NCBI RefSeq assembly: GCF_023055435.1
Contig: NW_025964001.1
Coordinates: 4,092,001-4,156,000, forward strand
Reading direction: 5' to 3'
Source of the DNA: Haliotis rufescens
Taxonomy: Eukaryota
DNA length: 64,000 nucleotides
A program made the position numbers and the translations under genes. The notes below the pieces were generated by a model. The model saw only the letters and a list, made by a program, of their open reading frames with translations. It had not been told where the DNA came from and ran no database searches. Below are positions 1 through 41,643 of the stretch, piece by piece; the stretch's first letter is position 1; each line of letters begins with the position of its first letter.

Positions 1-216
1 CACACGCAACCTCATTGCGAACCATGTATACGTTCACTGCGTGTCGTGTGTGTCTCATAAATGTTTCAGTGACTAATGAAACAAGTACTGACAAGACATT
101 TCTGACAAATGAGATCGGATACACAAACAAACAATCAAAAAGCACTACCATTGTCAGCTGTGGATTCAGATCTGGCGAGCCAAGGCAGAGTCGGCACATC
201 GTTGTTCTGGAGTTGG

Positions 217-1080
217 CTGTCACTGCACGGAAACGATGAGGTCTGACGTAATCTCCCATGAACTGAGGTCTTGTGGCAAGTGGGTGTTTATTGAAATGAC
301 GGACAGCAACTGGTTCCAGGACATATCGGATGTACTGATTACATCTGAGGCAGCCTTGAAAAGTGACCAGGACCAGCTTGCAGTCTTGTGAGATACATCC
401 CAAAGCAATGCCAAACCTCGCCCACAAGGGACACATAAACATATATTCCTTGGGGTGTAGGCCACATCCCTGTGACTCCAAACCTTCAGTCAAATGGAAT
501 CTCTGATGGTATTCTGCCAGTAGGGGCGTTTGATGAATTTCCTGGACGCCATTCCTGCTGATCTCAAGGTTCTAGTGGACAGAAGTCGACTGGGTAGCCA
601 TTGTCCATTCAGGATGGGACTCGTTGCAAATGGCTGTCGTCGTACTAATTCAATCAGTGTCCTGTCATCACGCTGTGACGTCACGGGAGGTCGTACAGAC
701 CATGGTAGGTCTTTCACAGCATCGGGTTGACCATGGTTTCGAACAAGTCGGCTGATGACAGTGTAATGGTAGCTCATGAGAGCTTTGAAGGACAAACTCG
801 TGGAAGGCATTCACACTGTTTGTCATCATTGCGTCTCTGAAATCCTCCTTTGTGCCATGTTCACAGGGAAGGAATAGACGTTACAAGTCGGCGGATTTAA
901 ATACCCAAATTTGAATTCAGTATCTCATGGGGTCCTCTTTTCATGTGTCTTGGCATTTCCCCTGACAAAAGCATGCTTTTGTTAAACGTCACATAGTGTA
1001 TGCAGTCAATCGATTTTGTAGAACTATGTAATATTTACACAGTAAAAGCATGTTTGTTCCTCCAACCAAGATTGTTTATC
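217..1080 (-). mobile_element. Tc1/mariner transposon remnant
   Basis: Fragments RPPVTSQRDDRTLIELVRRQPFATS and AYTPRNI are similar to the transposase at 28016-29052. Boundaries are approximate. Confidence 0.75.
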
Positions 1081-1440: not shown

Positions 1441-4400
1441 CTGCGCCTTGGCTGAGATTATTTGCTCCATGCTGTTGTTGGCACCCTGCAGTCCGTTGAT
1501 CTTGCCCAGGGCAAAGCTGGCCGCGTTCAGAACTTCAAGACTGTTGACATCCACGTTGAACAGACCCCCGGGCATACCTATGTCCCGCCTTTTGGCGCTG
1601 GTGCAACTATGGTGGGTCATATCGGTCATGTGGCTCCAAGGCTGGTCCCAGATAGTCACATCACAGATTTGAGTCTGAAACACACACACACACACAGTCA
1701 TCAATTACACGATCAAGACGCATATATACGTGTGGTTAGATGTATTTACTGGAAACTGGATCCATGACACGACAGATGTATTGGCTAGATACGGTGGGTC
1801 ATTACACGACCAAGATGTATTGGTTAGATACGGTGGGTCATTACACGACCCAGAGGTATTGGTTAGATACGGTGATTCATTCAACGGCCCAGATGTATTG
1901 GTTAGATACGGTGATTCATGACACAACCCAGAGGTATTAGCTGGATACGGTGGGTCATTACACGACCCAGATGTATTGGCTAGATACGGTGGTTCATTAC
2001 ACGACCAAGATGTATTGGCTAGATACGGTGGTTCATAACATGACCCAGAGGTATTAGCTGGATACGGTGATTTATGACGCGACCAGATGTATTGGCTAGA
2101 TATGGTGGTCCATTACACGATCAAGATGTATTGGCTAGATACGGTGGTTCATTACACGACCAAGATGTATTGGCTAGATACGGTTGTTCATGACACGACC
2201 CAGAGGTATTGGCTAGATACGGTGGTTCATTACACGACCAAGATGTATTGGCTAGACACGGTGGTTCATGACACGACCCAGATGTATTGGCTAGATACGG
2301 TGGTTCATTACACGACCAAGATGTATTGGCTAGATACGGTAGTTCATAACATGACCCACTGGTATTAGCTGGATACGGTGATTTATGACGCGACCAGATG
2401 TATTGGCTAGATACGGTGGTTCATTACACGACCAAGATGTATTGGCTAGATACGGTGGTTCATATCATGACCCAGAGATATTAGCTGGATATGGCGATTT
2501 ATGACGCGACCAGATGTATTGGCTAGATATGGTGGTCCATTACACGACCAGGGTGTATTGGCTAGATACGGTGGTTCATATCATGACCCAGAGATATTAG
2601 CTGGATACGGTGATTTATGACGCGACCAGATGTATTGGCTAGATATGGTGGTCCATTAACACGATCAAGATGTATTGGCTAGATATGGTGGTCCATTACA
2701 CGACCAGGGTGTATTGGCTAGATACGGTGGTTCATATCATGACCCAGAGATATTAGCTGGATACGGTGATTTATGACGCGACCAGATGTATTGGCTAGAT
2801 ATGGTGGTCCATTACACGACCCAGATGTATTAGCCATATACGGTGATGGACAAAGCTCATGGCATTGCTGAGTAAACTTCAAATGTCTCAGTCCTAGGCA
2901 AACAAACTTCAGCTGGAGTAGTATGATGGGTTTATGAAATATATTTACTTTTAATAAAGCAAAAAAAACCTTCCCATAATGACAAGAAATCTCTGTTGAA
3001 AACACGTTTTTTATACGAGACATACCTGGGTTCCATCACTCAGGCGGATCTTCAGCATGTAGTTGATGCCAGAAACCACCTGAAATGATATAAAATTGTT
3101 GCATTGAGGCCAGAGAAAACTCAGATCTTCTCTTAATAATGACATATGATCAATATCGGACAGAACACCCACACAGAGAAACCAGGAAACGACAACAAAC
3201 ATCAAAACTTAAAAAAAGATAGATGACGTAGTCATAACACACAAAATGCACATTTATAAATACTGTTTTATCATTACTGTATATTTATAAACGGTGACTG
3301 ATGTCAGTAATCAACTCTAGAAATTCTCATTTTGGTCAATTCCAAAGACATAGACATTATCAGGCTTCAGTGTTCATGGTTAGTGTTTATTCGGGTATTT
3401 ATTATCCCAAAACACACAACCGTGATAACGTTTTTATCAAATAATGTCATTCTTATATATCATTACGTAACAATGTCAGTCAGTCTGAAAGTGACAACTT
3501 GTCAATTCAGTTCCAACTGAAACACTATCTTGACGACAGTGACGTAACTACCACATAGCAAAAAAACCCAATTGACCATAGGTACTTTTTCAATTTGCGT
3601 TTCGCGGCAATCCATCGGTCCGCCCACTGGAGCAGTTTCCCTTTACGAAAGGGAAGCTACTCTAGTCTGTAAAACGCCAAGTTTGTTTACGTTTCGTAAC
3701 GGGATTACAGATTTCAGATTTCCCACACAGTCGCAAAATGAAACAAGGTATATTTCGGACATATACTGAACTGCAAAAGAAACGTCACCCCAAGTAACAT
3801 TGCTGAAAAGTTTACATTTAAATATCTGGGTAATTTTTGTCAAAGTTTCTAAAATTTAACATTACCTTGTCCGGAAAAATGAAATTTGATGACAAAAAAA
3901 CAAAGCGGATGACAATAAAACGGATCGCCCAAACGCATCACGGCAATGGCCATGGTAACCCGATGCACGTGAGTTCCGTGCAAATTGAAATGCACATGCG
4001 TTCCCCCATTTCTTGCCCTATAAAAATCCACCCAGATCGGATAACATTTATTCGTTATTGAATTGCTACCACATGCTAAGATTGACAAGAAATCAGTGAC
4101 ACCAAGCCCTTGGACAATTACAAGCTGGACAAACCGCCTTGCAAGTAGCCAATGCATTTCAAATCCACGTAAGGACCATATACAGGCTCCAGCAACGGCA
4201 CCAGACAACCAACACTACAGATAGTGGAAGATCAAGGGTCACCACTCGACGTCAGGATCGTCAGATTGTGCGACAGCATCTTCAAGATCGCTTTGTTACT
4301 GCTGCGGAAACTGCTCGACAGACCATGGGGATACACCAGAGACACATTAGTGTGTACAACGTGCGTCGACGATTGACGAGCAGACACCTCCACTGTCACA

Positions 4401-7097
4401 GGCCACACTGAGGACCCATTCTGACACCACGTCATCGCCGGGACCGTCTTCAGTGGGCAACACAGCACCAGCATTGGCGCCACCAGCAGTTGAGAAGAGT
4501 CCTCTTCTCAGGCGAGAGCCGTTACTGTGTCTCAACAGCAGATGGGAGAGAGAGAGTCTGTCGACGCCGTGGGGAACGTTATTCAGATGATTGTGTTGAT
4601 GAGAGAGACTCGTGGGGTGGTCCGAGCATCATGGTGTGAGGTGGAATTGGTCTTGCACAGAGGGTCGGCCCTCTGGTCTTCCAGAACATCGGTCCAGGGA
4701 GAGGCAATGGTGTCACAGCAGCTCGGTACATTGATCAAGTCTTGAGACCACACGCTATACCTAATTTGGCACGTCGCCGCAACCACGAATTTCAGCATGA
4801 TAAAGCCCGTGCCCACACTGCGAGAGCAACAAGAGACTTCCTACAGCAGAACGGCATCAAAACCATGCAGTGACCTGCCCTCAGTCCCGATTTAAATCCC
4901 ATTGCACCTGTAGGACGAGATTCAAAGACGGCTGAATGACGTCCGACCAAGGCCGACAACTGCAGCTGAACTGCATCAGGCGTTCCTCAGAGTGTGGCCT
5001 CCTGTGCCTATGGCCTTCATTAACCGCTTCATCCATTCCATGTATCGACGTTGAACGGCAGTCATCAATGCACATGGCGGACACACGAGATACTGACTTG
5101 TGATGCCATTTTCTCAGAGACTAATGTTGTGTTTCACTTTAAGAATATTTGACACTTTAATTTCAACCTTGATGATCAGTTTTGCCAAGTTTCATCTTTT
5201 TAATATGTCTCAAAGTATGTTTACAGTGTTTGGACAAATAAGGTTTCTCATATATCTATCCATGGTGACGTTTCTTTTGCGGTTCAGTATATTTCGTCCA
5301 AATGCAATTGTGTTTAATTCGAGGTCTACAAGTACAGAAATGTAACAGATACCTCGACTGTATTGATATTTTCCGTGTCACAGACTATTATTTATGTAAT
5401 GATAACAATTATCCTTGTAATTTGTCCAGGTACCCGACCATTAGTTCTGAATCGATCGCCGATTGACAAGGGTGATTCCATATTTGTTTGTTAACACTGA
5501 AAGTAGTACCCGCCTGACATCTCACATTTGCATCTTTATCCGAAAATGACCCTTTATCCGACTTTAGCCTACCGAGAAACCTACCCATTATATGATATAT
5601 GCAAGATATGATAGTTTATCCTCCTACTAACATACTTGGGTCTGGGCAGAGATGACTTGGTCCAGACTGTTGTCAGCCCCCTGTAGGCCGTTCAGTGTAA
5701 ACACAGCATAGAGCGCCATCCTCTGGATTTCTGGATCGGTGACATTGGCGGGGGTTGGAGCACCAACAAGCACGGCCCGCTTGCTGCTTGCAGTACATGC
5801 ATGCGTGGTTAATCGCTTGCCGTGTAGAATTGAATCAGAATAAAGGGTGACATCGCAGATCTGGGTCTGAAACACATCACTGCAATCATGTTATAAATGA
5901 GTTGAAATATGAATATCAAAAGGCTATTCTCAGGATATGGTGTGTAATTTCAAGCACACTTGTTATCCTGCTCCTTTTGATATCCACCTTATTACCACAC
6001 TGCAGTTTCATGTCCATTCTTGATTTGATGAGCTGCCATGAGCAAAGTCCTGTAACATGTCACGGGAGAGGTTGGGTAGAGAAGAGGTTAAAGCGTTCTC
6101 TCATTACTCGAAAGACCCTGGCTCGAACCCACACATGGTTACAATGTGTTAAAAGCGAGCATGACGCTCAGTCACTCATCAAATACTGCTGCCCCCAAAC
6201 GCCCGTCGAGACCAACAAGGACAGAAACAACATCTGCAGTGATGTTGTCGCCAGATGTTGACGGACTGGGTCAACGTGTCCTGCGCATCCGACAGCAGAC
6301 GCAGTGAGTGAGAGTGATAGAGGCACATTAGCATGTTAGCAGCTATATATATGTCAAGGAATGGCTCGTACGCAATGTTACACAGGTGTATACCGTATAT
6401 CTGATAGCCTGTGACATATGGCCTGAATATTTCAGTGAAGGTGTAAAACTCTGAAGAGAACTCACCGTCTGTCCGTTCTGCACCTTGAGGGACAGAAAGT
6501 AGTTGAAGCCAGCAATGCCGAAGGCACCGGCGCCAGGGACAACCTGTGAGGGAGGACAGTAATTGAGTCCAAATGATCAACTTTGGAAATAAATGGTATG
6601 AATCACATGCATTATCGATAGCAAATGATAAATTGCAAGTGTTGTTTAACGCAGCTGTATATCCAGGAATATGCGAGTTGTTGTAAGTACTTAAATTCTG
6701 GACCAGACAAACCAGTGTTACCATGACAACGACCCAGGCAACCTTGACAACTGATCCACTTAATTTGGCTTTGCGCCAATCTTAAGATACTAGGGACATA
6801 CTTGTCCCCGGAATCTTTGTTTACAATCTGTTTTGAAACATACCCAAATATACACGTTTTGGCGGACCAGGTGAGGTACACTCACTATTTACTGCGGAAG
6901 TAGGGACAGGCATATAGACAGACACCTACTTGAGTTTTAGCATTCAGAACAGACACGAGGCTTGCGTTCAGCTGGGTAACGGCGAAGCTTGACATCTGCT
7001 GAATGTCCCCTCTGGTCACGTCAGCATCCTTGGGGCTGCTTAAGAGTTGAGACGTGGCTAGTGGTAACACCACCAGGACCAGAGCTAGTATGTTCAT
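1441..7097 (-). CDS. Multicystatin paralogue (copy A), first five exons; continues beyond the left edge of the window
   Basis: Exons 6930-7097, 6466-6543, 5636-5866, 3026-3079, 1441-1674, all GT-AG, phase 0 and open. Same signal peptide as copy B. Linkers SSKR and AKRR. Domain 2 has QVVSG and QPW; domain 1 is divergent (QVVPGAGAFGIAG). Confidence 0.85.
1705..2845. repeat. 39-bp minisatellite in intron 4 of copy A
   Basis: Unit CATTACACGACCAAGATGTATTGGCTAGATACGGTGGTT, degenerate, just under 30 copies. Confidence 0.92.
3764..5289 (+). mobile_element. Tc1-family transposon with both TIRs and a disabled transposase, in intron 3 of copy A
   Basis: TIRs TACTGAACTGCAAAAGAAACGTCACC and GGTGACGTTTCTTTTGCGGTTCAGTA flanked by TA. 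Transposase remnants RVTTRRQDR, QHDKARAH and SPDLNPI with stops. Confidence 0.9.
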
Positions 7098-7559
7098 TCT
7101 TTGTGTAAGTAAAGTGGAACTATAATCCCTACTGAACTGACTGCTCTTTATATATGTGAAAACCGGCCTACGTTCAGCTGTTGTGTCCCAAGGTTGCCTG
7201 TGTGGGCCTGTTGATCTCTGTTTTGTAACATGACTCTGCGGCGTCCTAGGTCAGCGATAACGTTTCTTGTTGCATAATATATAGTTATACTTTCTACATG
7301 CCTGTTATATCATCAGAGCTCAAGTCTTAAAAACACCACGTAAGCTTATTGCAGTTATATATACTTAAAGGTAAGGCTGCAAAAAAATATTTTTTCCGTA
7401 TCACTGCACGCTAACTCTCACAGTCTACTTTCGAATTAAGGGTTCTGAGGAGAGAGTGAATTGTGGTTTCAAGTGGGTAATGTGACACCTAATATGTATG
7501 CTGACCTAAAACATATGTACATCATGTATATTGAATCAACCGTTATAAGAGGATATTCC

Positions 7560-13575: not shown

Positions 13576-16500
13576 CTAGGCCAGTTGTCCACATGAGTCG
13601 GATACCAGCTGATATTTAGGATCATTCCACGCCTGGTACCACACCGACACCGTGCACGCCATACGCTGCAGCAAAGAAACAAAGACTCACCAACCTAAAT
13701 AACAAAGACTTAATAAAACAAAACAAGCCATAATGAGAAATCTTATTTTCCCCGACACCATGTTTCTGAAGAACATGGCCCTTATCTCTGTTTACCTGGG
13801 GCATGCTGTTGCTGGCGGGACAGTCGGTGATTCCTTTGCCGGTGCTGTCGTCGTTGTTCATGCAAGAGGATGTCACAAGGTGAAGGTCAAACGAGTACTT
13901 CATGCCAGCCACAACCTGTAGACAGTCAAATTGATCTTCAACAACAGAATAACACGACCTTACGTCACATACCACACCTAGAGGTTTCAATGGTGTAGGC
14001 TTCCAAAGGTTATATCTTTGGAGCAATCATTAGGCGTTCCTTGTATTCCAACATGAACACACACGAATAGCCCGGTTTCAAGTAAACGGCCTTAAAGAGT
14101 GATAATTTGATGTTAAGGCTTAAGGGGACAATCTATTTGCCTAATATTTCATATAATCAAGCTGAGGGGTAGATCATTTCATTTCACGGTTGGTGATATA
14201 AAAATGTTGGGAAAAGATAGATTTGTATGACCCACGTCGCACTTAAACTTTACCAGCCTCCATATAGCTGGAATATTGCTACGTACGGCGTTAGACAACA
14301 AACAAATACACTGTGCCACCACTCCCATCTGATGTCTTAATTACCAATAATGACGTCTGTGTTAACAAAACTAAAGAGAGTGTATAAATACGTTAATTGT
14401 TATGACTTCTTATATTGTGCTGCGTGTCCAGATGTGTGGATACCAACAGTGTACATTCATAACGGAAGACGACCTGTGAAGATCCAGGCTAGAATAGGTC
14501 TTCAACAACCCATGCTTGTCGTAAGAGGCGACTATGCTTGTAAGAGGCGACTAACTGGATCGCATGGTCAGGTTCCATCCATACCAATCAGAGACCACAC
14601 CACAATTTGAGAACAAGGTATTTCGCTGAATTGGTTGATGCATGTCATCATGTCCAAAATGCGTGAATTGATGCTCATGATATCATTCACTGGATTGTCT
14701 GTTCCAGACTCGATGATTTAGAGACCGCCGTCATATAGTTTGACTATTGCTGAGTATGGTGTTTAACAAAACATAATGGACGACACAGCTTCGGTAGTAA
14801 TAATAGGGTGTCAAACGTTGCATCATTGGTTTATCCTTAGGGATTCCTTGTATTCCTTTTGATGAAAGAACTGACTGACGATGATCTCGTTCAGTGTTAT
14901 GGGGTATACCTGTTGTGTGACGTGGTCCACTTTCTCAGTCACCATCCGGAACATGTTGTTCATCTTTCCATTCAAAGCGTCTTCTACAAACGACACAGCT
15001 TGCTGCACTGGAGCCGTGAGATTGGCGGGCTCCACACCTCCCACAAAAAGACCTCTCTTGCTGACAGCGGAGCATTTGTGCTCTGTCACCTTCTTTGTGT
15101 TGGTCCAGGATTGGTACCATATCCTCACTTCACACATCTGGGTCTGGGGGTATACAGCACAACCATTAACAGAGTGAGTGAGTGTGCTTTACTGACAGTT
15201 TAAAAATACCACAGCTTTAGTTTGAAAGAGATCTTAAGAGCAAAAACAAAATATATAGAAATGTATAAAGCGGTGTTCTTCTTATGAAAAATGGCATACT
15301 CATTTTACATCTTCAATCTCATAGTGCCCAACTAGTTACAACTACTGAAAACAAATCTTAGCTCACCTTATCTCCATTCTGAAGACTCAGGGTAAGGATG
15401 TAGTTAATACCGGAGACGATCTGAAAGAAAGACATTTTTGAGATGTCGTGCGTCTGAATCCATTTCTTTGACACATACATGAATGGGTATAATGTGATGA
15501 TTGTAGGTCTACACGCAGAAGAAACGTTCCCAAGAACGTATTTAAACAATGTATTTCTATTAACTGTTCTTCAACACTATCCTATGCATTATTGAACAAT
15601 AATACACATTAACAGAAACATCCGTACTTGTTTTCTGGCGTTAACGACTTTGACTAGAGAGTTCTGTTCTCCTTGAAGTCCGTTGATCTCCGTGACAGCG
15701 AAGTTGGCCACTTCCTTAATCTCTGCACTGTTGACGTCCACAGCAGTGACGCCCCCGAGAAGACCCAGTGCACGCTTTGTCACCTGGGTACAGCTGTGCT
15801 GTGTCATCTCCAATTTGTTGAGCCAGGGCTGAGACCAGACCTTCACGTTACAGATCTGGGTCTGAGGGCAGACAGGAGACATAATGATCAGGTAACAGGT
15901 GTAGAATAGAGGCATAGTTGAACAGGTGTAGCGTTACAGGTGTACCGCTGAGAATGTTTCTAACTACTGTCCAGATCTTCACACTAGATCTAGATCTGCG
16001 GACAGACAGGGGGCTTATTAGTCAGGTAACAGTTATAGAACAACATAAAGTACATCATCCTCAAAACATTTAGTTTTAGAATGTATCTGACATCTATCAA
16101 AACAAATAATATAACAGGACTCACCTTGTCCCCTTCCTTAATACGTATGGCCAGGACGTAGTTCACTCCAGCAACAACCTGAAACGTTTGAAGAAACGTT
16201 TGAAGAAGTATAAAGGACATGCATTGTGCACTGTGTGTACTACCTGTATAATTATGTACTGCTTAAGAAATATCTTAGGTAAAGCTCAGGCAACCTCTCA
16301 CAATATTTGTCACAGAAATATCATTATTGCATGCTGCTTCTGGTATAGGCCTGATACAATACCATTTTCCTTGACACAAGTAAGCTTTGGTTATGGGACA
16401 TGTATACAGCCAAACGATCTTGTAGAATTATGAGTAATATGTACATGTGTAAAGTCAATGCTGGCCTTACTTGAGTTTTGGCTGAGATAATTTGCTCCAT

Positions 16501-19500
16501 GCTGTTCTGGGCACCCTGCAGTCCGTTGATCTTGCCGAGGGCAAAGTTGGATATGTTCAGTACTTCAAGGCTGTTGACGTCCACGTTGGTCAGACCCCCG
16601 GGCATCCCGTTCCGCTTGGTGGCGGTGGTGCAGCTATGGTGGGTCAGCTTGGTCATGTGGGTCCAGGGCTGGTCCCAGATGGTCAAGTCACAGATCTGGG
16701 TCTGTAGCAAAGTCATCGATTACATGACCGGGACGAGTGGTCACATGTATTGACTGGACACAGTGATCCATTACACGACCAGGGCGAGTGGTTAGATGTA
16801 TTGACTGGACACAGTGATCCATTACACGACCAGGGCGAGTGGTTAGATGTATGGACTGGACACAGTGATCCATTACACGACCAGGACGAGTGGTTAGATG
16901 TATTGACTGGACACAGTGATTCATTACACGACCAGGGCGAGTGGTTAGATGTATTGACTGGACACAGTGATCCATTACATGACCAGGACGAGTGGTTAGA
17001 TGTATTGACTGGACACAGTGATCCATTACATGACCAGGACGAGTGGTTAGATGTATTGACTGGACACAGTGATCCATTACACGACCAGGACGAGAGTATG
17101 TAAGATGTATTGACTGGACACAGTGATCCATTACATGACCAGGACGAGTGGTTAGATGTATTGACTGGACACAGTGATCCATTACATGACCGGGACGAGT
17201 GGTCACATGTATTGACTGGACACAGTGATCCATTACATGACCAGGACGAGTGGTTAGATGTATTGACTGGACACAGTGATCCATTACACGACCAGGACGA
17301 GTGGATGGATGTATTGACTGGACACAGTGATCCATTACATGACCAGGACGAGTGGTTAGATGTATTGACTGGACACAGTGATCCATTACATGACCAGGAC
17401 GAGTGGTTAGATGTATTGACTGGACACAGTGATCCATTACACGACCAGGACGAGAGTATGTAAGATGTATTGACTGGACACAGTGATCCATTACATGACC
17501 GGGACGAGTGGTCACATGTATTGACTGGACACAGTGATCCATTACACGACCAGGACGAGTGGTTAGATGTATTGACTGGACACAGTGATTCATTACACGA
17601 CCAGGACGAGTGGTTAGATGTATTGACTGGACACAGTGATCCATTACACGACCAGCGCGAGTGGTAAGATGTATTGACTGGACACAGTGATCCATTACAC
17701 GACCAGGACGAGTGGATGGATGTATTGACTGGACACAGTGATCCATTACACGACCAGGGCGAGTGGTTAGATGTATTGACTGGACACAGTGATCCATTAC
17801 ACGACCAGGACGAGTGGTTAGATGTATTGACTGGACACAGTGATCCATTACACGACCAGGACGAGTGGATGGATGTATTGACTGGACACAGTGATTCATT
17901 ACATGACCGGGACGAGTGGTTAGATGTATTGACTGGACACAGTGATCCATTACACGACCAGGACGAGTGGTTAGATGTATTGACTGGACACAGTGATCCA
18001 TTACACGACCAGGACGAGTGGTTAGATGTATTGACTGGACACAGTGATCCATTACACGACCAGGACGAGTGGATGGATGTATTGACTGGACACAGTGATC
18101 CATTACACGACCAGGGCGAGTGGTTAGATGTATTGACTGGACACAGTGATCCATTACACGACCAGGGCGAGTGGTTAGATGTATGGACTGGACACAGTGA
18201 TCCATTACACGACCAGGACGAGTGGTTAGATGTATTGACTGGACACAGTGATCCATTACATGACCGGGACGAGTGGTAAGATGTATTGACTGGACACAGT
18301 GATCCATTACACGACCAGGACGAGTGGATGGATGTATTGACTGGACACAGTGATCCATTACACGACCAGGACGAGTGGTTAGATGTATGGACTGGACACA
18401 GTGATCCATTACACGACCAGGACGAGTGGTTAGATGTATTGACTGGACACAGTGATCCATTACACGACCAGGACGAGTGGTTAGATGTATTGACTGGACA
18501 CAGTGATCCATTACACGACCAGGGCGAGTGGTTAGATGTATTGACTGGACACAGTGATTCATTACACGACCAGGGCGAGTGGTTAGATGTATTGACTGGA
18601 CACAGTGATCCATTACACGACCAGGACGAGTGGATGGATGTATTGACTGGACACAGTGATCCATTACACGACCATGACGAGTGGTTAGATGTATTGACTG
18701 GACACAGTGATCCATTACACGACCAGGGCGAGTGGTAAGATGTATTGACTGGACACAGTGATCCATTACATGACCAGGACGAGAGTATGTAAGATGTATT
18801 GACTGGACACAGTGATCCATTACACGACCAGGACGAGAGTATGTAAGATGTATTGACTGGACACAGTGATCCATTACACGACCATGACGAGTGGTTAGAT
18901 GTATTGACTGGACACAGTGATCCATTACACGACCAGGACGAGAGTATGTAAGATGTATTGACTGGACACAGTGATCCATTACATGACCAGGACGAGTGGT
19001 TAGATGTATTGACTGGACACAGTGATCCATTACACGACCAGGACGAGTGGTTAGATGTATTGACTGGACACAGTGATCCATTACACGACCAGGACGAGAG
19101 TATGTAAGATGTATTGACTGGACACAGTGATCCATTACATGACCAGGACGAGAGTATGTAAGATGTATTGACTGGACACAGTGATCCATTACACGACCAG
19201 GACGAGAGTATGTAAGATGTATTGACTGGACACAGTGATCCATTACACGACCAGGACGAGAGTATGTAAGATGTATTGACTGGACACAGTGATCCATTAC
19301 ATGACCAGGACGAGTGGTTAGATGTATGGACTGGACACAGTGATCCATTACACGACCAGGACGAGTGGTTAGATGTATTGACTGGACACAGTGATCCATT
19401 ACACGACCAGGACGAGAGTATGTAAGATGGATTGGTTGGAATTAGCTCAGCTTCTGTTTTCGCTATCCATGGCACATTGCCGAGTAAACTCCAAATATAT

Positions 19501-22500
19501 TAGTCCTCGACAAACACGGTTGAGCTGGAGTAGTTTGACGGGTTTATTAAACCCTCTCCATTGTCTAATAAATACTCATAAGACTATTCGTCACAAGAAA
19601 TCTCTGCTAAAAACACATTATTTTATACAAGACATACCTGGGTTCCATCAATCAGGCGGATCTTCAGAATGTAGTTGGTGCCAGCAACCACCTGAAATAA
19701 GATAAGATTGTTGTGTTGACGCCAGAGAAACAACTCAGATCTTCTCTTAATAATGAAATATAAACAATATCTGAAACAGTGAAATCAATAAACGAAAACA
19801 AACATCAAAATTTGAAAAGATGTTAAAATCGATACTGCAGTCGGAAACACATATTTATAAATTATGTCATAGCACACTATTTACTTTATAAACGGTGACT
19901 TAGCCTAGACCTATACCAGGAGACACCAATATTAGGTGAGTTATCGAAGAAGAATTTGTCACATGACAAATTATATCCGCCTTCTAAGATACCTGGGTCT
20001 TGGCAGAGATGACTTGATCCAGACTGTTTTGGGCCCCCTGTAGGCCGTTCAGTGTAGTCACAGCAAAGGTCGCCATCCTCTGGATATCTGTACGGTTGAC
20101 ATCGACGGAGGTTGGAGCACCAACAAGCACGGCCCGCTTGCTGCGTGTAGTACATGCATGATGGGTAACACGCTTGTCGTTCAGCCATGCACGTGACCAG
20201 ATGGTAACAGTGCAGATCTGGGTCTAGAACACATCACCGCAATTGTGTCATAAGGATTTGAAAAAAAGAAAATCAAACACAATCGTGGTGATTCAAGTAC
20301 AGAATCCGTCCCCATTACATGTGAACAGCCTTAACCATGGCAACACCATCTGAAATGGAGTCTCTGGTTCGAATCCACACATGGTAACATTGTGTTAAGT
20401 GCATTCTGGTTGCCCCGCCATATGGATGGGATAGTGTTAAAAGCGGCGTCATCAACATTTGACCCTACTCGTCTGCAACACTTCGCGGGACTCTAAAACA
20501 CCCCTATCTGCGTCCCATGGAATCGTCTGGACCAACAAGGACAGAAGCAACAACAGTTGGGATGATGTCTCCAGATGTTGATGGGGAGCAGACGTAGTGA
20601 ATGAGAATGAGAGAGCAATAATAACTATTAACTATTCATGTACATCGACGAATGCTTGTTTTTTACCAGTGGGATGGCCACAGGGAGAGAGAGAGACAGA
20701 CAGACAGACAAAAGACAGACAGACAGAGAGAGAGAGAGAGAGAGGGGGAGGGGGTATGCACAATTCTTCAGAGGCCGGGATCTTAAGGGCTGAGTCACCC
20801 AATAATGAGGACATGTAAGCTTAGTGAGTGCTGGCATATCAGTGTGTAAAAATCTGAAGAGAACTCACCTGCTGTCCGTTCTGTATCTCGATGGTCAGTA
20901 AGTAGTTGACGCCAGAGACAACCTGTGAAGAAGAAGAAGTAAAAGCTCAGCATCTGAAACACAACTCCGGTGTTCCGAACTCGGATATAGCGAAGTATAG
21001 GCCATCATAATATTGAGTTCAAATAATCAACATTGGAAAACATAGTACAGAACTATAAATCACACGCATTATAGTAAGCTGTGCAATTCCCTCCTGGTGT
21101 CGTTGATAAACAGTGAATGTTGTTTAACGTTGCAATTTGCAATTTCCCAGCAATATTATGACGATGGTAAGTAATCGTGTTTGAACCAGGCAAACCAGTA
21201 AGCGATAGCATGAGCAACGATCCGCTATCGGGGCCTGATGGCACGTTGTCAGAGCTTGACCAACCCCTCCTGTTGGCTCTTAAACCAAGCTTGGGATGCA
21301 GGAGACCTAATCTCCCCCAGAGTCCTCACCAGGTTCCCAACTAATAAAAATAAGGCTGTAATAAGTATGACAATAATAAAAAGACCAACCCCTGGATTTA
21401 CATGAAATGCGTTAGTTCTCAGAATAGATTATGTTTAGTTGAGTCAAATATACAATTTAATTTATTTTTATATGATGACACCCTAATATATCTTTTTTTT
21501 ATTCACGGTGCCTAAATTCAATCCCCAAATAGTTTATTGTCCACTTTTTTATAAGCATAAAATCTATTTATTCCGCAAAAACAAATGCTGGACTACCTCT
21601 TTGATAACATCAATGTACACTTTGGAGGTAGAACATTTGAGCAACATTTGTGCTCCCCTACTTGCTAATCTGTTTCTCTATGCATATGAATCGGAGTTTC
21701 TCTTCGGATTGGTAAAAAGAAAAAAAAGGGTAATTTATCTGAGAGGTTTAACTTTAACTTCAGGTATATCGAGGATCTGATGTTGTTCAATAACAATCAA
21801 AGAGCCAGTTCCCTTCCACTGTTTTACCCACCTGAACTAGAAATAAAGGAGACCAGTGAGACCGCCACGTCCATTTCATATTTAGATCTATGCATAAAGA
21901 TTCAGAGTGACAAAACATTCTCCACAAGACTGTATGACAAGAGGGATGACTTCAACCTTCCAATAGTCAACTTTCCCTTCATGTCTAGCAATATTCCTGC
22001 AGCTCAAGCCCGTGGTGTCTACTTTCACAAGTTTTGAGGTTCAATCGAGAATGGTCTCAAAATTGCAAAGAGCGTCATGCAACTCTTGCTTGGAAGTGGT
22101 TTGATGAAGGTTGCAACATTCAGGGCCTCAGTTAAGCTTTCAAATATTTTATGGTAGACATGTGGATGACATTTCCAAATTTGCCGCATCAGTGACAAGA
22201 ATGATGTCTGATGCAATTCCCTATTTTTTTCCCGTTCCCGTGTTTTTTAAGGTGAACAATTAACTTGCCATTGCATGTGTTTGTGACGGTTGCCACCGGT
22301 AGGGCAGGGCACGCTCCCCTTTTCGCGAACACCTGGTATCATCACTATTTGATAGTGATTCATAAACGGATACTTATGAAAACAGTCGGAATCACACAAT
22401 TAACTCTGCTTTTTGGCAAGCATGTCTTATTAATATGGAAAATAGATTGTCGCTTATATCTACACAGCTCTTAGCAATATTCTAACAATATCACGGCGGA

Positions 22501-22802
22501 GGACACTAGAAATGAGCTTCCGACATTGTACCCATTTCAGGCCTTCGCGTTAACCACTAGGCTACCCCGCCGTCCCTATTTACTGCAGAGGTAAAAACAG
22601 ACATATAGATACCTACTTGAGTTTTAGCATCCACTACAGACACCAGAGTGTTCTGTGACCCGAGGAGCGTGTTCAGCTGGGTTAGGGCGAAGCTTGCCAT
22701 CTGCTGAATGTCGTCCCTGTTCACGTCGACAGCCACGGGGCCGCCTATGAGTTGAGACGTGGCTAGTGGTAACACCACAAGGACCAGAGCTAGTATGTTC
22801 AT
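13576..22802 (-). CDS. Secreted five-domain multicystatin precursor (copy B, complete, 513 aa)
   Basis: Exons, all GT-AG and phase 0: 22617-22802, 20869-20922, 19993-20223, 19638-19691, 16471-16701, 16125-16178, 15628-15861, 15367-15420, 14910-15143, 13796-13915, 13576-13665 (1542 nt including TAG). Signal peptide MNILALVLVVLPLATS. Five QxVxG motifs formed across junctions (QVVSG, QVVAG, QVVAG, QIVSG, QVVAG). N-terminal G/GG in each domain, PW-like second loops (RAW, QPW, QPW, QSW, QAW) and paired cysteines. Linkers RSKR, ATKR, VTKR, VSKR. Confidence 0.9.
14468..14770 (+). mobile_element. SINE-like dispersed repeat (third family) in intron 9 of copy B
   Basis: GACCTGTGAAGATCC...CAACCCATGCTTGTCGTAAGAGGCGAC...GGATTGTCTG recurs at about 24377-24565 and 30527-30860, and on the minus strand at 45040-45300 and 55545-55810. 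Confidence 0.7.
16720..19428. repeat. 51/54-bp minisatellite (about 50 copies) in intron 4 of copy B
   Basis: Unit TGACTGGACACAGTGATCCATTACACGACCAGGACGAGTGGTTAGATGTAT, with a 54-bp variant containing GAGAGTATGTAAG. Confidence 0.97.
21585..22410 (+). mobile_element. Penelope-like retroelement RT fragment in intron 1 of copy B
   Basis: CAPLLANLFLYAYE, YPPELEIKET, SYLDL and LYDKRDDFNLPIVNFPFMSSNIP. The paralogous copy is at about 39585-41240, interrupted by a minisatellite. Confidence 0.75.
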
Positions 22803-37085: not shown

Positions 37086-40000
37086 CCCGTTCCGCTGGTG
37101 CAGCTATGGCGGGTCAACTCGGTCATCTGGGTCCAGAGCTGGTCCCAGATGGTCACGTCACAGATCTGGGTCTGAAACACAGTCATCGATTACATGACCG
37201 GGACGAGTGATTAGATGTATGGACTGGACACAGTGATCCATTACACGACCAGGGCGAGTGGTTAGATGTATTGACTGGACACAGTGATCCATTACACGAC
37301 CAGGACGAGTGGTTAGATGTATTGACTGGACACAGTGATCCATTACACGACCAGGGCGAGTGGTTAGATGTATTGACTGGACACAGTGATCCATTACACG
37401 ACCAGGGCGAGTGGTTAGATGTATTGACTGGACACAGTGATCCATTACACGACCAGGGCGAGTGGTTAGATGTATTGACTGGACACAGTGATCCATTACA
37501 CGACCAGGACGAGTGGTTAGATGTATTGACTGGACACAGTGATCCATTACACGACCAGGACGAGTGGTTAGATGTATTGACTGGACACAGTGATCCATTA
37601 CATGACCAAACACGATTGAGCTGGAGTAGTTTGACGGGTTTATTAAACCCTCTCCTTTATCTAATAAATACTCATAAGACTATTAGTCATAAGAAATCTC
37701 TGCTAAGAACACATTATTTTATACGAGACATACCTGGGTTCCATCAATCAGGCGGATCTTCAGAATGTAGTTGGTTCCAGCAACCACCTGAAATAAGATA
37801 AGATTGTTGTGTTGACGCCAGAGAAAACTCAGATCTTCTCTTAATAATGAAATATAAACAATATCTGAAACAGTGAAATCAATAAACGAAAACAAACATC
37901 AAATTTGAAAAGATGTTATGATCGATACTGCAGTCGGAAAACACATATTTATAAATTATGTTATACCACACTATTTACTTTATAAACGGTGACTTAGCCT
38001 AGACCTATACCAGGAGACACCAATATTAGTTATATATCGAAGAAGAATTTGTCACATGACAAATTATATCCGCCTTCTAAGATACCTGGGTCTTGGCAGA
38101 GATGACTTGATCAAGACTGTTTTGGGCCCCCTGTAGGCCGTTCAGTGCAGTCACAGCAAAGGTCGCCATCCTCTGGATATCTGTACGGTTGACATCGACG
38201 GAGGTTGGAGCACCAACAAGCACGGCCCGCTTGCTGCGTGTAGTACATGCATGATGGGTAACACGCTTGTCGTTCAGCCATGCACGTGACCAGATGGTAA
38301 CAGTGCAGATCTGGGTCTAGAACACATCACCGCAATTGTGTCATAAGGATTTGAAAAAAGAAAATTAAATCAAACACAATCGTATTCTGGGTGCACGGCC
38401 ATATGGATGGGATAGTGTTAAAAGCGGCGTCATCAACATTTGACCCTTCTCGTCTGCAACACTTCGCGGGACTCTAAAACACCCCTATCTGCGTCCCATG
38501 GAACCGTCTGGACCAACAAGGACAGAAGCAACAACAGTTGGGATGATGTCTCCAGATGTTGATGGGCAGCAGATGTAGTGAATGAGAATGAGAGAGCAAT
38601 AATAACTATCAACTATATATGTACATTGACGAATGCTTGTTTTTTACCAGTGGGATGTCCACAGCGAGAGAGAGAGGGGGGGGGGGGGGGGGTGAGCGGG
38701 ATGTGCACAATTCACAGGTCTTCAGATGCCGGAATCTTAAGAGCTGAGTCACCTAATAATGAGGACATGTAAGCTTAGTGAGTGCTGGCATATCAATGTG
38801 TAAAAATCTGAAGAGAACTCACCTGCTGTCCGTTCTGTATCTCGAGGGTCAGTAAGTAGTTGACGCCAGAGACAACCTGTGAAGAAGAAGAAGAAAAACC
38901 TCAGCATCTGAAACACAACTCCGGTGATCCGAACTCGGATATGGCGAAGTATAGGCCATCATAATATTGAGTTCAAATAATCAACATTGGAAAACATAGT
39001 ACAGAACTATAAATCACACGCATTATAGTAAGCTGTGCAATACCCCCAGCCCCCTCTAACCACCCACCCCACCCCACCCCCAACCCCATCCCCCACCCCC
39101 CTGGTGTCGTTATAAACAGTTAATGTTGTATAACGTCGCAATTAGCAATTTCCCAGCAATGTTATGACGATTGTAAGTAATCGTGTTTGAACAAGGCAAA
39201 CCAGTAAGCGATAGCATGAGCAACGATCCGCTATCGGGGCCTGATAGCACGCGGTCAGAGCTTGACCAAACCCTCCTGTTGGCTCTTAAGCCAAGCTTGA
39301 GATACTGGAGACCTAATCTCCCCCAGCGTCCTCACCAGGCTCCCAACTAATAAAAATAAGGCTGTAATAAGTATGACAATAATAAAAAGACCAACCCCTG
39401 GATTTACATGAAATGCGTTAAATCTCAGAATAGATTATGTTTAGATGAGTCAAATATACAATTTAATATATTTATATATGATGACACCCTAATGTATCTT
39501 TTTTATTCACGTTACCTAAATCCAATCCCAAAATAGTTTATTGACCATTTTGTATAAGCATAAAATCTTTTTTTTTTCGCAAAAACAAATGCTGAACTAC
39601 CTCCTTGATAACATCAATGTACACTTTGGAAGTAGAATATTTGAGCACCATTTCTGCTCCCCTACTTGCTGATCTGGTTCTGTATGCTTATGAATCGGAG
39701 TTTCTTTTCGGATTGGTAAAGTAAAAAAAAAGGTAATTTATCCAAGAGGTTTAACTTTAGCTTCAGGTATATCGATGATCTGATGTTGTTCAATAACAAT
39801 CAAATAGCAGACTCGGTGACCAGTAGGTCATCGTACCATACTTTCAACCACAGGACTGTCTGGCCAAGACTCGGTGACCTGTAGGTCATCGAACCATACT
39901 ATCAACCACAGGACTGTCTGGCCTAGACTCAGTGACTTGTAGGTCATCGTACCATACTATCCACCAACAGGACTGTCTGGCCTAGACTCAGTGACTTGTA

Positions 40001-41643
40001 GGTCATCGTACCATACTATCAACCACAGGACTGTCTGGCCAAGACTCGGTGACCTGTAGGTCATCGTACCGTACTATCAACAACAGGACTGTCTGGCCAA
40101 GACTCGGTGACCTGTAGGTCATCGTACCATACTATCAACCACAGGATTGTCTGGCCAAGACTCAGTGACCTGTAGGTGATCGTACCATACTATCAACCAC
40201 AGGACTGTCTGGCCAAGACTCGGTGACTTGTAGGTCATCGTACCATACTATCAACCACAGGACTGTCTGGCCAAGACTCGGTGACCTGTAGGTCATCGTA
40301 CCGTACTATCAACCACAGGACTGTCTGGCCTAGACTCAGTGACTTGTAGGTCATCGTACCATACTATCAACCACAGGACTGTCTGGCCAAGACTCAGTGA
40401 CCTGTAGGTCATCGTACCATGCTATCAACCACAGGACTGTCTGGCCAAGACTCGGTGACCTGTAGGTCAACGTACCGTACTATCAACCACAGGACTGTCT
40501 GGCCTAGACTCAGTGACTTGTAGGTCATCGTACCATACTGTCAACCACAGGACTGTCTGGCCAAGACTCAGTGACCTGTAGGTCATCGTACCGTACTATC
40601 ACCCACAGGACTGTCTGGCCAAGACTCGGTGACCTGTAGGTCATCGTACCGTACTATCAACCACAGGACTGTCTGGCCAAGACTCGGTGACCTGTAGGTC
40701 ATCGTACCGTACTATCAACCACAGGACTGTCTGGCCAAGACTCGGTGACCTGTAGGTCATCGTACCGTACTATCAACAACAGGACTGTCTGGCCAAGACT
40801 CGGTGACCTGTAGGTCATCGTACCGTACTATCAACCACAGGACTGTCTGGCCAAGACTCGGTGACCTGTAGGTCATCGTACCATACTATCAACCACAGGA
40901 CTGTCGCACCATACTATAGAAGCTGTTTGATTCAGGTTGCAACATTCAGGGCCTCAGTAAAGCTTTAAAAATATTTTATAGTAGACATGTGGAGGACATT
41001 TCCAAATTTGACGCATCAGTGACAAGAATGATGTCTGACGCAATTCCCTATGTTGACTTGTCCCGTGTTTTTTTTAAGGTGAACAATTTACTTGCCTGTG
41101 CATGTGTTTGTGACGGGTGCCACCGGTGGGGCATGTCACGCTCCCCTTTTCGCGAACACCTGGTATCATCACTATTTGATAGTGATTCATAAATAGATAC
41201 TTATGATACAGTCGGAATCACACAATCAACTCTGCTTTTTGGCAAGCATGTCTTATTAATATGGAAAATAGATTGTCGCTTATATCTACACAGCTCTTAG
41301 CAATATTCTAACAATATCACGGCGGAGGACACTAGAAATGAGTTTCCGACATTGTACCCATTTCAGGACTCGAACCCGAGCCTTCACTTTAACCACTAGG
41401 CTACCCCGCCGTCCCTTTTTACTGCAGAGGTTAAAAAAAAGGCAGTTTGACACCTACTTGAGTTTTAGCATCCACGACAGACACCAGAGTGTTCTGTGAC
41501 CCGAGGAGCGTGTTCAGCTGGGTAAGGGCGAAGCTTGCCATCTGCTGAATGTCGTCCCTGTTCACGTCGACAGCCATGGGTCCCCCCATGAGTTGAGACG
41601 TGGCTAGTGGTAACACCACAAGGACCAGAGCTAGTATGTTCAT
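37073..41643 (-). CDS. Multicystatin copy C, 5' part: potentially intact two-domain cystatin (207 aa) truncated by a LINE
   Basis: Exons 41458-41643, 38823-38876, 38086-38316, 37734-37787 and 37073-37171 read without interruption. The frame ends ...HSCTSGTGVSE-TGA inside the antisense LINE tail. Whether it is expressed is inference. Confidence 0.65.
37190..37608. repeat. 51-bp minisatellite (about 8 copies) in intron 4 of copy C
   Basis: Same unit and same intronic position as 16720-19428. Confidence 0.95.
39810..40905. repeat. 58-bp minisatellite (about 19 copies) in intron 1 of copy C
   Basis: Unit GACTCGGTGACCTGTAGGTCATCGTACCATACTATCAACCACAGGACTGTCTGGCCAA. Confidence 0.95.

What the first reader, a model, noticed from the sequence alone, without database searches (positions are those of the whole stretch)
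5636..7097. Copy A domain 1 has all three protease-binding elements remodelled but keeps its frame and disulfide
Seen, relative to copies B and C: N-terminal IGGP becomes LSSP; QVVSG becomes QVVPGAGAFGIAG through an in-frame 24-nt insertion (exon 6466-6543 is 78 nt, not 54); WSRAW becomes YSDSI; and 18 nt are deleted in frame after the helix. The signal peptide, splice sites, both cysteines and the KR linker are retained. Inference: coordinated change on the binding edge with only in-frame indels suggests a new target, such as another protease class or a non-inhibitory ligand, rather than decay. Cystatin folds are known to be redeployed this way (fetuins, latexin, cathelin).
Basis: partly seen in the sequence, partly recalled or inferred. 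Interest (0 to 1): 0.75.

Follow-up and report, generated by a model that had tools for sequence, protein, structure and literature searches.

The report
Remodelled first domain of abalone multicystatin
The first of six protease-inhibitor domains in an expressed abalone gene has lost or rebuilt every loop that normally grips cysteine proteases yet still looks folded and is kept in a second species, so it is probably a retargeted or retired module, not a dying gene.

Summary
Copy A is an intact 13-exon, six-domain secreted cystatin polyprotein on the minus strand. It equals the RefSeq model "multicystatin-like [Haliotis rufescens]" (P0029, 610 aa).

Contigs of four runs join its first four exons at exactly the modelled GT..AG sites, 78-nt exon included.

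Domain 1 (D1) keeps a cystatin fold in two predictions, with the first hairpin turn grown from 3 to 9 residues.

Against six canonical D1s of H. asinina and H. rubra, 21 changes arose on copy A's lineage and 4 on copy B's (p=0.0009). dN/dS of A against B is 0.98.

The H. cracherodii orthologue keeps every remodelled element. There D1 differs at 5 of 96 residues, the rest of the protein at 30 of 498. That is a burst of change followed by stasis.

"Not decay" is supported for the gene and the fold. "New target" is untested. In-frame indels prove little, because five downstream domains enforce the frame.

My odds: retargeted or otherwise selected module 0.45, inert but foldable leader 0.35, residual inhibitor 0.12.

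The parts
6930..7097 (-). Copy A exon 1. It encodes the signal peptide (7097-7050), the N-terminal trunk with LSSP (7043-7032) in place of IGGP, the shortened helix, and the 18-nt deletion junction between 6957 and 6956.
   Evidence: Translation and splice context. Nucleotide alignment to copy B. Spliced contigs end or join at 6928/6930. Equals P0029 residues 1-56.
6466..6543 (-). Copy A exon 2, 78 nt. It encodes the QVVPG motif plus the inserted AGAFGIAG (24-nt insertion at 6507-6530) and strand beta-3.
   Evidence: Joints 5866|6466 and 6541(+2)|6928 appear in X1, X2, X9 and X13. Equals P0029 residues 57-82.
5777..5866 (-). Domain 1 part of exon 3: Cys (5857-5855), YSDSI second loop (5842-5828), Cys (5797-5795), Lys-Arg linker (5782-5777).
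   Evidence: Equals P0029 residues 83-112.
5636..5776 (-). Domain 2 part of exon 3 (N-terminal trunk and helix of domain 2).
3026..3079 (-). Copy A exon 4 (domain 2, canonical QVVSG hairpin).
   Evidence: Joint 3077(+2)|5634 in X1 and X2.
1441..1674 (-). Copy A exon 5 (end of domain 2, linker, start of domain 3). Eight further exons lie before the window start, at window coordinates -34 to about -5278, and end in a TAG.
19993..22802 (-). Copy B domain 1 (exons 22802-22617, 20922-20869, 20223-19993): the canonical reference state (IGGP, QVVSG, WSRAW).
   Evidence: Equals P0027.
38086..41643 (-). Copy C domain 1 (exons 41643-41458, 38876-38823, 38316-38086), also canonical (MGGP, QVVSG, WSRAW).
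   Evidence: Equals P0045.

Best explanation
Shown:
- Window 7097-5777 (minus strand) encodes the signal peptide and first domain of an intact, transcribed six-domain secreted cystatin polyprotein. Its domains are separated by Lys-Arg sites.
- After copies A and B separated, and before the H. rufescens and H. cracherodii lineages split, this one domain went through a burst of protein change.
- The trunk Gly-Gly became Ser-Ser.
- The QxVxG hairpin gained eight Gly/Ala-rich residues.
- Both tryptophans of the second loop were replaced.
- Six residues were deleted after the helix. This loop aligns with the Ser-Asn-Asp loop of chicken cystatin.

Inferred:
- The three-part wedge that blocks papain-like proteases is dismantled, so D1 most likely no longer acts as a canonical tight inhibitor of those enzymes.
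- The fold, the disulfide and the Lys-Arg site remain. D1 would therefore still be secreted and, if the Lys-Arg sites are cut as in other polyproteins, released as a free protein of about 95 residues.
- Since the burst it has changed no faster than its sister domains. I read this as renewed purifying selection on a module that now does something else. The most likely role is binding a different partner through the enlarged first loop and the rebuilt second loop.

The new role and partner are not shown by anything here.
For: - Intact gene: every exon translation is a contiguous piece of P0029, residues 1-610.
- Transcription: three GT..AG joints fall exactly at the modelled exon ends. The two within D1 are seen in X1, X2, X9 and X13, the third in X1 and X2. 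Spliced contigs have word depth of about 900-1350 in X1 and X2; intron-containing contigs there have 18.5 or less.
- No retrocopy: the genome holds no intronless or further A-type copy.
- Fold kept in AlphaFold2: A-D1 has helix 30-43, strands 46-58, 68-79, 82-93 and 99-108. Mean pLDDT over the 10-residue blocks spanning residues 21-60 and 71-90 is 73-80. The first loop is 59-67, with pLDDT below 50 at 61-65. In copy B the same turn is 3 residues, 64-66.
- Fold kept in the Atlas model: residues 17-112 match cystatin clusters at TM 0.81.
- Asymmetric change: in D1, 21 changes are A-derived and 4 B-derived. The same ratio is 11:3 in D2, 2:3 in D3, 2:6 in D4 and 5:3 in the last domain.
- Not an old paralogue: dS of D1 (0.26) is close to dS of D3 (0.23) and to the 16.5% mismatch of aligned non-coding flanks.
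- Conservation: H. cracherodii P0044 keeps LSSP, QVVPGAGAFGIAG, YSDSI and the deletion. D1 differs at 5 of 96 positions, the rest at 30 of 498, the edge at 1 of 34.
- Burst then stasis: D1's share of change fell from 21 of 30 before the species split to 5 of 18 after it (Fisher p=0.007). Against D3 alone p=0.003.
Against: - Pairwise dN/dS of D1 is 0.98, as expected for neutral drift. The lineage estimate of 1.65 rests on an assumed equal split of 14 synonymous changes and is not significant (p=0.14).
- A-derived changes are spread over the helix and strands as well as the edge (p=0.17).
- The insertion is Gly/Ala-rich, looks like a slippage product and is predicted disordered.
- The frame, splice sites, signal peptide and a foldable domain are all needed by the five downstream domains, whatever D1 does.
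- The slowdown test uses protein counts only. Gene conversion between A and B in the 3' domains (dS 0.08-0.09 in D4) inflates D1's early share.
- If the other domains of copy A evolve at a mean omega of 0.6 or more, 5 of 35 differences in D1 is compatible with a neutral D1 (P=0.11 or more).
- No binding partner, activity or tissue is known.
- Both AlphaFold2 alignments have only 10 rows, and mean pLDDT is 66-68.
Confidence: 0.45

Rival explanations
1. D1 is an inert leader domain. It lost its inhibitory function and is no longer selected for any binding. It persists only because it carries the signal peptide, must stay in frame, and must fold well enough for the five working domains behind it to be secreted. 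The remodelled loops are relaxed-constraint debris.
For: - dN/dS is 0.98 against copy B.
- Changes are not confined to the edge.
- The Gly/Ala-rich insertion is predicted disordered.
- Pfam finds only 5 cystatin stretches for six domains, and A exon 1 has no Pfam hit where B exon 1 has one.
- Another degenerate domain exists in this gene family: P0026 domain 7 scores 79 bits in the family HMM.
- The time since remodelling may be short, because the two species differ at only 35 of 610 residues.
Against: - D1's share of change dropped after the species split (p=0.007; p=0.003 against D3 alone). Constant neutral decay does not predict this.
- D1 now differs less between species (5 of 96) than canonical domain 2 (12 of 94).
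- The edge shows 1 change in 34 positions.
- Both cysteines and the Lys-Arg site are kept in both species.
Confidence: 0.35
2. D1 is still a cysteine-protease inhibitor with shifted specificity. The letters Q-V-V-P-G still fit QxVxG. The changes would be arms-race tuning towards a particular papain-like enzyme, of a pathogen or a digestive one, with an unusually open cleft.
For: - The QxVxG letters are retained.
- The fold and disulfide are retained.
- The estimated A-lineage omega is above 1.
- Copy B's own second loop already departs from the Pro-Trp seen in domains 2-4: it reads WSRAW.
Against: - All three wedge elements changed at once. The trunk Gly-Gly is lost, the hairpin turn went from 3 to 9 residues, and both Trp are lost.
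- From recalled mutagenesis of chicken cystatin, cystatin C and stefin A scaffolds, each such change alone costs orders of magnitude in affinity. This was not checked in a paper here.
Confidence: 0.12

Closest known systems
Multicystatin polyproteins (potato multicystatin, PDB 4lzi and 2w9p; abalone 'multicystatin-like' RefSeq models)
   Same: A tandem chain of cystatin domains in one secreted or stored precursor. 4lzi is the best Foldseek hit of the whole model (E=5e-17). Copy A is itself the RefSeq entry XP_046351314.2.
   Different: In potato multicystatin the domains are canonical inhibitors (recalled). Here one domain of six has lost the canonical contact elements. The abalone domains carry one C-terminal disulfide and Lys-Arg linkers.
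Kininogen domain 1 (recalled as the non-inhibitory first cystatin domain of a three-domain chain)
   Same: It is the first domain of a multi-cystatin chain, with the fold kept while later domains stay canonical. Kininogen clusters are structural neighbours of residues 17-112 (TM 0.77-0.79).
   Different: Kininogen is vertebrate-specific and old (Kordis and Turk 2009, passages read). The abalone change is confined to one clade and is recent. That kininogen D1 is inactive is recalled, not checked here.
Fetuin-B, latexin and the CRES subgroup: cystatin folds that lost cysteine-protease inhibition and gained other roles
   Same: A cystatin fold with mutated contact regions. Fetuin-B and latexin complexes with metalloproteases are among the Foldseek hits (ranks 3-13). 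[quoted passage not shown]
   Different: Fetuin-B and latexin use two cystatin-like domains plus a special linker (recalled). The A-D1 to D2 linker is an ordinary Lys-Arg spacer like the others. No metalloprotease link is shown here.
Adhiron/Affimer and stefin A peptide-display scaffolds (PDB 4n6t)
   Same: Engineered cystatins in which protease binding is removed and new binding is created by inserting residues in the two hairpin loops and altering the N-terminus. These are the same three sites that changed in A-D1. 4n6t is a Foldseek hit (rank 50).
   Different: They are man-made. The design details are recalled, not read here. In A-D1 only the first loop is lengthened; the second is substituted without a change in length.

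Membership tests
Cystatin fold (Pfam PF00031, type-2-like) | One alpha-helix packed across a five-stranded antiparallel sheet | tested here: met
   AlphaFold2 model of P0029 gives strand 23-25, helix 30-43 and strands 46-58, 68-79, 82-93, 99-108. The Atlas model of residues 17-112 matches cystatin clusters at TM 0.81 over 88 residues.
Cystatin fold (Pfam PF00031, type-2-like) | Significant match of domain 1 itself to the Pfam cystatin profile | tested here: inconclusive
   A exon 1 has no hit, while B exon 1 has E=2.2e-4. P0029 gives 5 stretches for six domains and P0027 gives 5 for five. The tool does not say which domain fails. The joined D1 was not searched on its own.
Canonical papain-inhibiting cystatin | Conserved Gly in the N-terminal trunk | tested here: not met
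   QLLSSP in A and in the H. cracherodii orthologue. A Gly is kept in that trunk segment in B, C and all six outgroup D1s.
Canonical papain-inhibiting cystatin | QxVxG in a tight first hairpin | tested here: not met
   The letters QVVPG remain, but eight residues follow them before strand 3. The predicted turn is 9 residues against 3 in copy B.
Canonical papain-inhibiting cystatin | Trp (Pro-Trp) in the second hairpin | tested here: not met
   W-S-R-A-W became Y-S-D-S-I, so both Trp are lost in A and in P0044.
Canonical papain-inhibiting cystatin | Measured inhibition of papain-like proteases | not testable with these tools
   This needs recombinant protein and enzyme assays.
Abalone multicystatin polyprotein | Signal peptide, C-terminal disulfide pair and Lys-Arg linker after the domain | tested here: met
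   Residues 1-16 are identical to copy B. Cys86 and Cys106 are present, and KR is at 111-112. The signal peptide was read by eye, not predicted with a tool.
Legumain-inhibiting cystatins (C, E/M, F type) | Asn-containing loop between the helix and strand 2 | tested here: not met
   The six deleted residues G-S-Q-N-T-L lie where chicken cystatin has its ...ASNDK... loop, in a weak alignment of B exon 1 to 1yvb_I (E=0.16). The role of that loop in legumain binding is recalled.
Fetuin-B / latexin type metalloprotease inhibitors | Two cystatin-like modules joined by a specialised inhibitory linker | tested here: not met
   The D1-D2 linker is CTASSKR|AVLVG, like the other linkers of A and B. The fetuin linker motif is recalled, not taken from a call.

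The most novel reading that the evidence does not exclude
Domain 1 of copy A is a natural loop-grafted cystatin scaffold. After an episode of positive selection in one abalone clade, its enlarged Gly/Ala/Phe first loop and Trp-free second loop bind a new partner. That partner could be a non-papain protease or a pathogen or self protein. The domain is delivered as a free module by Lys-Arg cleavage of the polyprotein.
Probability: 0.3. Interest if true: 0.6.

Novelty: new member of a known kind. Interest (0 to 1): 0.4.

Why it matters
Cystatin domains that give up protease inhibition for new roles are known mainly from old vertebrate families, where the transition itself can no longer be seen.

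Here the transition is young and can be dated. The canonical state survives next door in copies B and C and in two other abalone species. The derived state is shared by at least two species and is expressed.

That makes a clean pair of natural proteins for asking what it takes to retarget or retire a cystatin wedge. It also tests directly whether a dead domain inside a polyprotein is kept only by the reading frame.

For abalone biology it flags one member of a small immune or digestive inhibitor cluster as functionally different from its neighbours.

Tried and rejected
Rejected readings:
- (1) Pseudogene or downstream lesions. All 13 exons are open and match P0029. The long intron after exon 5 holds a transposon remnant and a 256-bp duplication but no exon damage.
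- (2) Not transcribed. Spliced contigs exist in four runs.
- (3) Processed retrocopy as the source of the joined form. The genome search found only copies B and C.
- (4) D1 exons acquired from an older, more divergent paralogue. dS of D1 (0.26) is not above that of D3 (0.23) or the non-coding flanks.

Searches that led nowhere:
- Full-length proteins with an A-type D1 in the 90% clusters, using P0029 residues 17-112 as query: only P0029's own cluster scored, 1 of 80 candidates. That cluster also holds H. cracherodii P0044.
- Short fragments, using exon 3 as query: 2 candidates, none scored.
- Papers. 'cystatin' with 'Haliotis' gave 37 papers; 15 were listed and none is about this gene by title or abstract start. 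'multicystatin' with 'abalone' gave 0. The search for 'multi-domain cystatin', 'multidomain cystatin' or 'multicystatin' gave 144 papers; 25 were listed and none is on molluscs.
- Of Kordis and Turk 2009 (PMC2784779) I read 12 passages only. Its additional file 5, which lists lophotrochozoan multidomain cystatins, is a supplement that I could not see and may bear on novelty.

Not done:
- I did not search or fold a spliced model of my own. The joined step was left out, and the database proteins P0029 and P0027 that one search returned were used instead.
- A codon-model test on the A lineage could not be run, because no DNA of the orthologues from other species was available.
Full report
**What is there**

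The finding lies on the minus strand. Three tandem paralogues of a multi-domain cystatin gene start at window 7097 (A), 22802 (B) and 41643 (C).

Each cystatin domain is built from phase-0 exons. A long exon carries the end of one domain, a Lys-Arg linker and the start of the next. A short 54-nt exon carries the QxVxG hairpin.

Copy A's first exons are 7097-6930, 6543-6466, 5866-5636, 3079-3026 and 1674-1441. All have canonical AG/GT borders. The gene then leaves the window.

In the 40 kb fetched upstream of the window I found the remaining eight exons, down to a TAG at about window coordinate -5278.

Every exon translation is a contiguous piece of one database protein. That protein is P0029, 610 aa, "multicystatin-like [Haliotis rufescens]", XP_046351314.2. 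It lies on a contig of the same length as the window's contig.

Copy B equals P0027 (513 aa, five domains). Copy C's first two domains equal P0045 (207 aa).

I did not search or fold a spliced model of my own. That joined step was left out, and these returned database proteins were used instead.

**The observation**

All four changes are real.
- The trunk reads QLLSSP in A, QLIGGP in B and QLMGGP in C.
- Exon 2 is 78 nt in A against 54 nt in B and C. One 24-nt insertion at 6507-6530 turns VVSGVNY into VVPGAGAFGIAGFNY.
- WSRAW became YSDSI.
- One 18-nt deletion between 6957 and 6956 removes G-S-Q-N-T-L after the helix.

The signal peptide is identical in A and B. Both cysteines and the Lys-Arg site remain.

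Two refinements apply. The letters Q-V-V-P-G still fit QxVxG, so it is the length of the turn that changes. And 5636-5776 belongs to domain 2, not domain 1.

The deletion junction and two substitutions beside it create an Asn-Ala-Ser sequon that copy B lacks (read by eye).

**Is it alive?**

Contigs of four coded runs were laid on window 2900-7400. X1 and X2 carry the label organism A, X9 organism C and X13 organism D.

They join 5866|6466 (skipping 599 bases) and 6543|6930 (skipping 386) in all four runs. They join 3079|5636 (skipping 2556) in X1 and X2. Each joint has CT..AC ends on the plus strand, which is GT..AG on the gene's strand.

The runs are only guessed to be RNA. The spliced form itself is the evidence, and the genome has no intronless copy.

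Spliced contigs have word depth of about 900-1350 in X1 and X2. Intron-containing contigs there have 18.5 or less. No joint that skips the 78-nt exon was listed, though contigs drop rare variants.

One 376-nt contig of X9 spans exons 1-3 with 3 other letters in all.

Both 'would refute' conditions that can be tested on sequence therefore fail: the gene is transcribed and it has no downstream lesion.

**Fold**

AlphaFold2 on a 10-row alignment gave mean pLDDT 67.5 for P0029.

It models A-D1 as:
- a short N-terminal strand, 23-25
- helix 30-43
- strand 46-58
- a 9-residue loop, 59-67, with pLDDT below 50 at 61-65
- strands 68-79, 82-93 and 99-108

Block pLDDT is 73-80 over residues 21-60 and 71-90 and falls to 63-65 at the domain's C-terminal end. 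The other domains give similar values.

The model of P0027 gives B-D1 helix 30-47, a 4-residue link, strand 52-63 and a 3-residue turn at 64-66, then the same sheet. So the helix is four residues shorter in A, the link after it is halved, and the first hairpin turn is three times longer.

The Atlas's own model of residues 17-112 matches cystatin clusters at TM 0.81, and also matches monellin and kininogen clusters.

Foldseek on the whole model finds potato multicystatin 4lzi (E=5e-17), fetuin-B, latexin, cystatin C, cystatin E/M and the Adhiron scaffold.

Pfam finds five cystatin stretches in six-domain P0029 and five in five-domain P0027. A exon 1 alone has no hit where B exon 1 has one.

**How it evolved**

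Eight other D1s are close to one another. They come from copy B, its H. cracherodii orthologue, four H. asinina proteins and two H. rubra proteins. They score 138-147 bits on a family HMM. A-D1 scores 82 and its H. cracherodii orthologue 80.

I polarised the 34 A/B differences in D1 with six outgroup D1s. The result is 21 A-derived, 4 B-derived and 9 ambiguous (p=0.0009).

The same ratio (ambiguous sites omitted) is 11:3 in D2, 2:3 in D3, 2:6 in D4 and 5:3 in the last domain.

Nei-Gojobori estimates for A against B, by domain:

| Region | dN | dS | omega |
|---|---|---|---|
| Signal peptide | 0 | 0.071 | 0 |
| D1 | 0.259 | 0.264 | 0.98 |
| D2 | 0.145 | 0.160 | 0.91 |
| D3 | 0.062 | 0.233 | 0.27 |
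| D4 (part) | 0.041 | 0.087 | 0.47 |

Aligned non-coding flanks differ at 117 of 709 columns. The D1 exons are therefore not an older import.

If synonymous changes split evenly between the two lineages, omega on the A lineage is about 1.65. That is not significantly above 1 (p=0.14).

A-derived changes fall on 9 of 26 edge positions and 12 of 62 others (p=0.17). Counting all differences gives 15 of 26 against 19 of 62 (p=0.03).

H. asinina P0026 shares copy A's extra fifth domain yet has a canonical D1. The remodelling therefore followed the origin of the A-type gene, if no gene conversion intervened in H. asinina.

**A second species**

P0029's 90% cluster also holds P0044 (610 aa, H. cracherodii, XP_071079363.1). 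It has LSSP, QVVPGAGAFGIAG, YSDSI and the six-residue gap.

Differences between the two species:

| Domain | Differing residues |
|---|---|
| D1 | 5 of 96 |
| D2 | 12 of 94 |
| D3 | 7 of 97 |
| D4 | 4 of 96 |
| D5 | 5 of 94 |
| D6 | 2 of 117 |
| Edge positions of D1 | 1 of 34 |

The B orthologues differ at 1 of 94 in D1 and 19 of 513 overall.

D1's share of change fell from 21 of 30 (A-derived, against D3+D4+D6) to 5 of 18 between the species (p=0.007). Against D3 alone p=0.003. Using all A/B differences instead, p=0.18.

If D1 were neutral now and the rest had a mean omega of 0.3-0.5, then 5 of 35 differences falling in D1 would be unlikely (P=0.001-0.049). At omega of 0.6 or more it would not be unlikely.

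**Reading**

Shown:
- an intact, expressed gene
- a domain that keeps its fold but lacks each canonical contact element
- change concentrated on one lineage and one domain
- the derived state shared by two named species and carried by contigs of two further coded organism labels

Inferred:
- Canonical papain-type inhibition is lost. This rests on recalled mutagenesis of cystatins and on the design of Adhiron and stefin scaffolds, which disable binding at the same three sites.
- The deleted loop aligns with the ...ASNDK... loop of chicken cystatin (weak alignment, E=0.16). I recall that loop as the legumain site of type-2 cystatins.

What favours a selected role over inert persistence is the burst-then-stasis pattern and the untouched loops in the second species. 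What favours inert persistence is omega of about 1, the spread of changes over the whole domain, and a disordered low-complexity insert.

I put a retargeted or otherwise selected module at 0.45, an inert foldable leader at 0.35, and a residual inhibitor with shifted specificity at 0.12.

**Known and new**

The gene is already annotated. Earlier notes of this scan describe copy B as a five-domain Lys-Arg polyprotein and copy C as a possible two-domain gene.

Cystatin domains that lost inhibition are a known kind. Examples are fetuins, latexin, cathelicidins and the CRES group (passages of PMC2784779).

I found no paper on abalone multicystatins. Supplements of PMC2784779 were not visible to me.

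This is therefore a new, young and datable member of a known kind.

Noticed in passing
window 170-915 and 817-1336: The 1.5-kb intron between copy A exon 5 and the next exon holds a dispersed repeat with at least 57 other matches in the genome at 66-88% identity. Its minus-strand translation looks like the C-terminal part of a Tc1/mariner transposase with stops (by eye, recalled motif). A 256-bp unit is duplicated in tandem at 99% identity.
   Followed up: partly
window 1773-2845, 16711-19416, 37177-37608: The same intron of domain 2 carries a minisatellite in all three copies: 39 nt x 27.6 in A, 51 nt x 52.5 in B and 51 nt x 8.5 in C. Both periods are multiples of three. In B the array is open for 903 and 920 codons on the gene's strand; in A it is not. 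The RefSeq proteins do not include it.
   Followed up: partly
window 6054-6152: A short dispersed repeat of about 100 nt lies inside intron 2 of copy A. At least 35 other copies were listed at 77-83% identity. It may be a SINE-like element; this was not tested.
   Followed up: no
window 31664-31882, 32150-32194 and 37088-37171: Copy C has an in-frame stop in the exon homologous to B 15628-15861, a changed hairpin (VAVVNY), and a truncated domain-2/3 junction exon. RefSeq models only its first two domains, as a 207-aa protein (P0045). H. cracherodii has a 209-aa counterpart (P0047).
   Followed up: partly
P0026 (H. asinina), last domain: The likely H. asinina counterpart of copy A has seven domains. 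Its last one has lost QVVAG and the Trp loop, and scores 79 bits on the family HMM, as low as A-D1. Domain-level degeneration therefore recurs in this gene lineage.
   Followed up: partly
window 5636-5776, 3026-3079 and 1588-1674 (domain 2 of copy A): Domain 2 keeps all canonical motifs. Yet it is the fastest-changing domain between H. rufescens and H. cracherodii (12 of 94), and its omega is 0.91 against copy B.
   Followed up: partly
window 5815-5810 (A) and the matching place in B exon 20223-19993: D1 of both A and B has an internal Lys-Arg just after the second loop (GKR in A, DKR in B). The H. asinina and H. rubra D1s have Lys-Gln or Thr-Gln there. It is a possible extra dibasic site.
   Followed up: no
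L007, about window coordinates -38375 to -35515, plus strand: Further cystatin-like exons lie on the opposite strand about 35 kb upstream of the window (tblastn E down to 8e-14). The cluster therefore extends beyond copies A to C.
   Followed up: no
window 39809-40905, 50155-51169, 59922-60689: Other long tandem arrays: 58 nt x 18.9 inside copy C's first intron, 52 nt x 19.8 in a stretch with strong GC skew (0.22), and 41 nt x 13.8.
   Followed up: no
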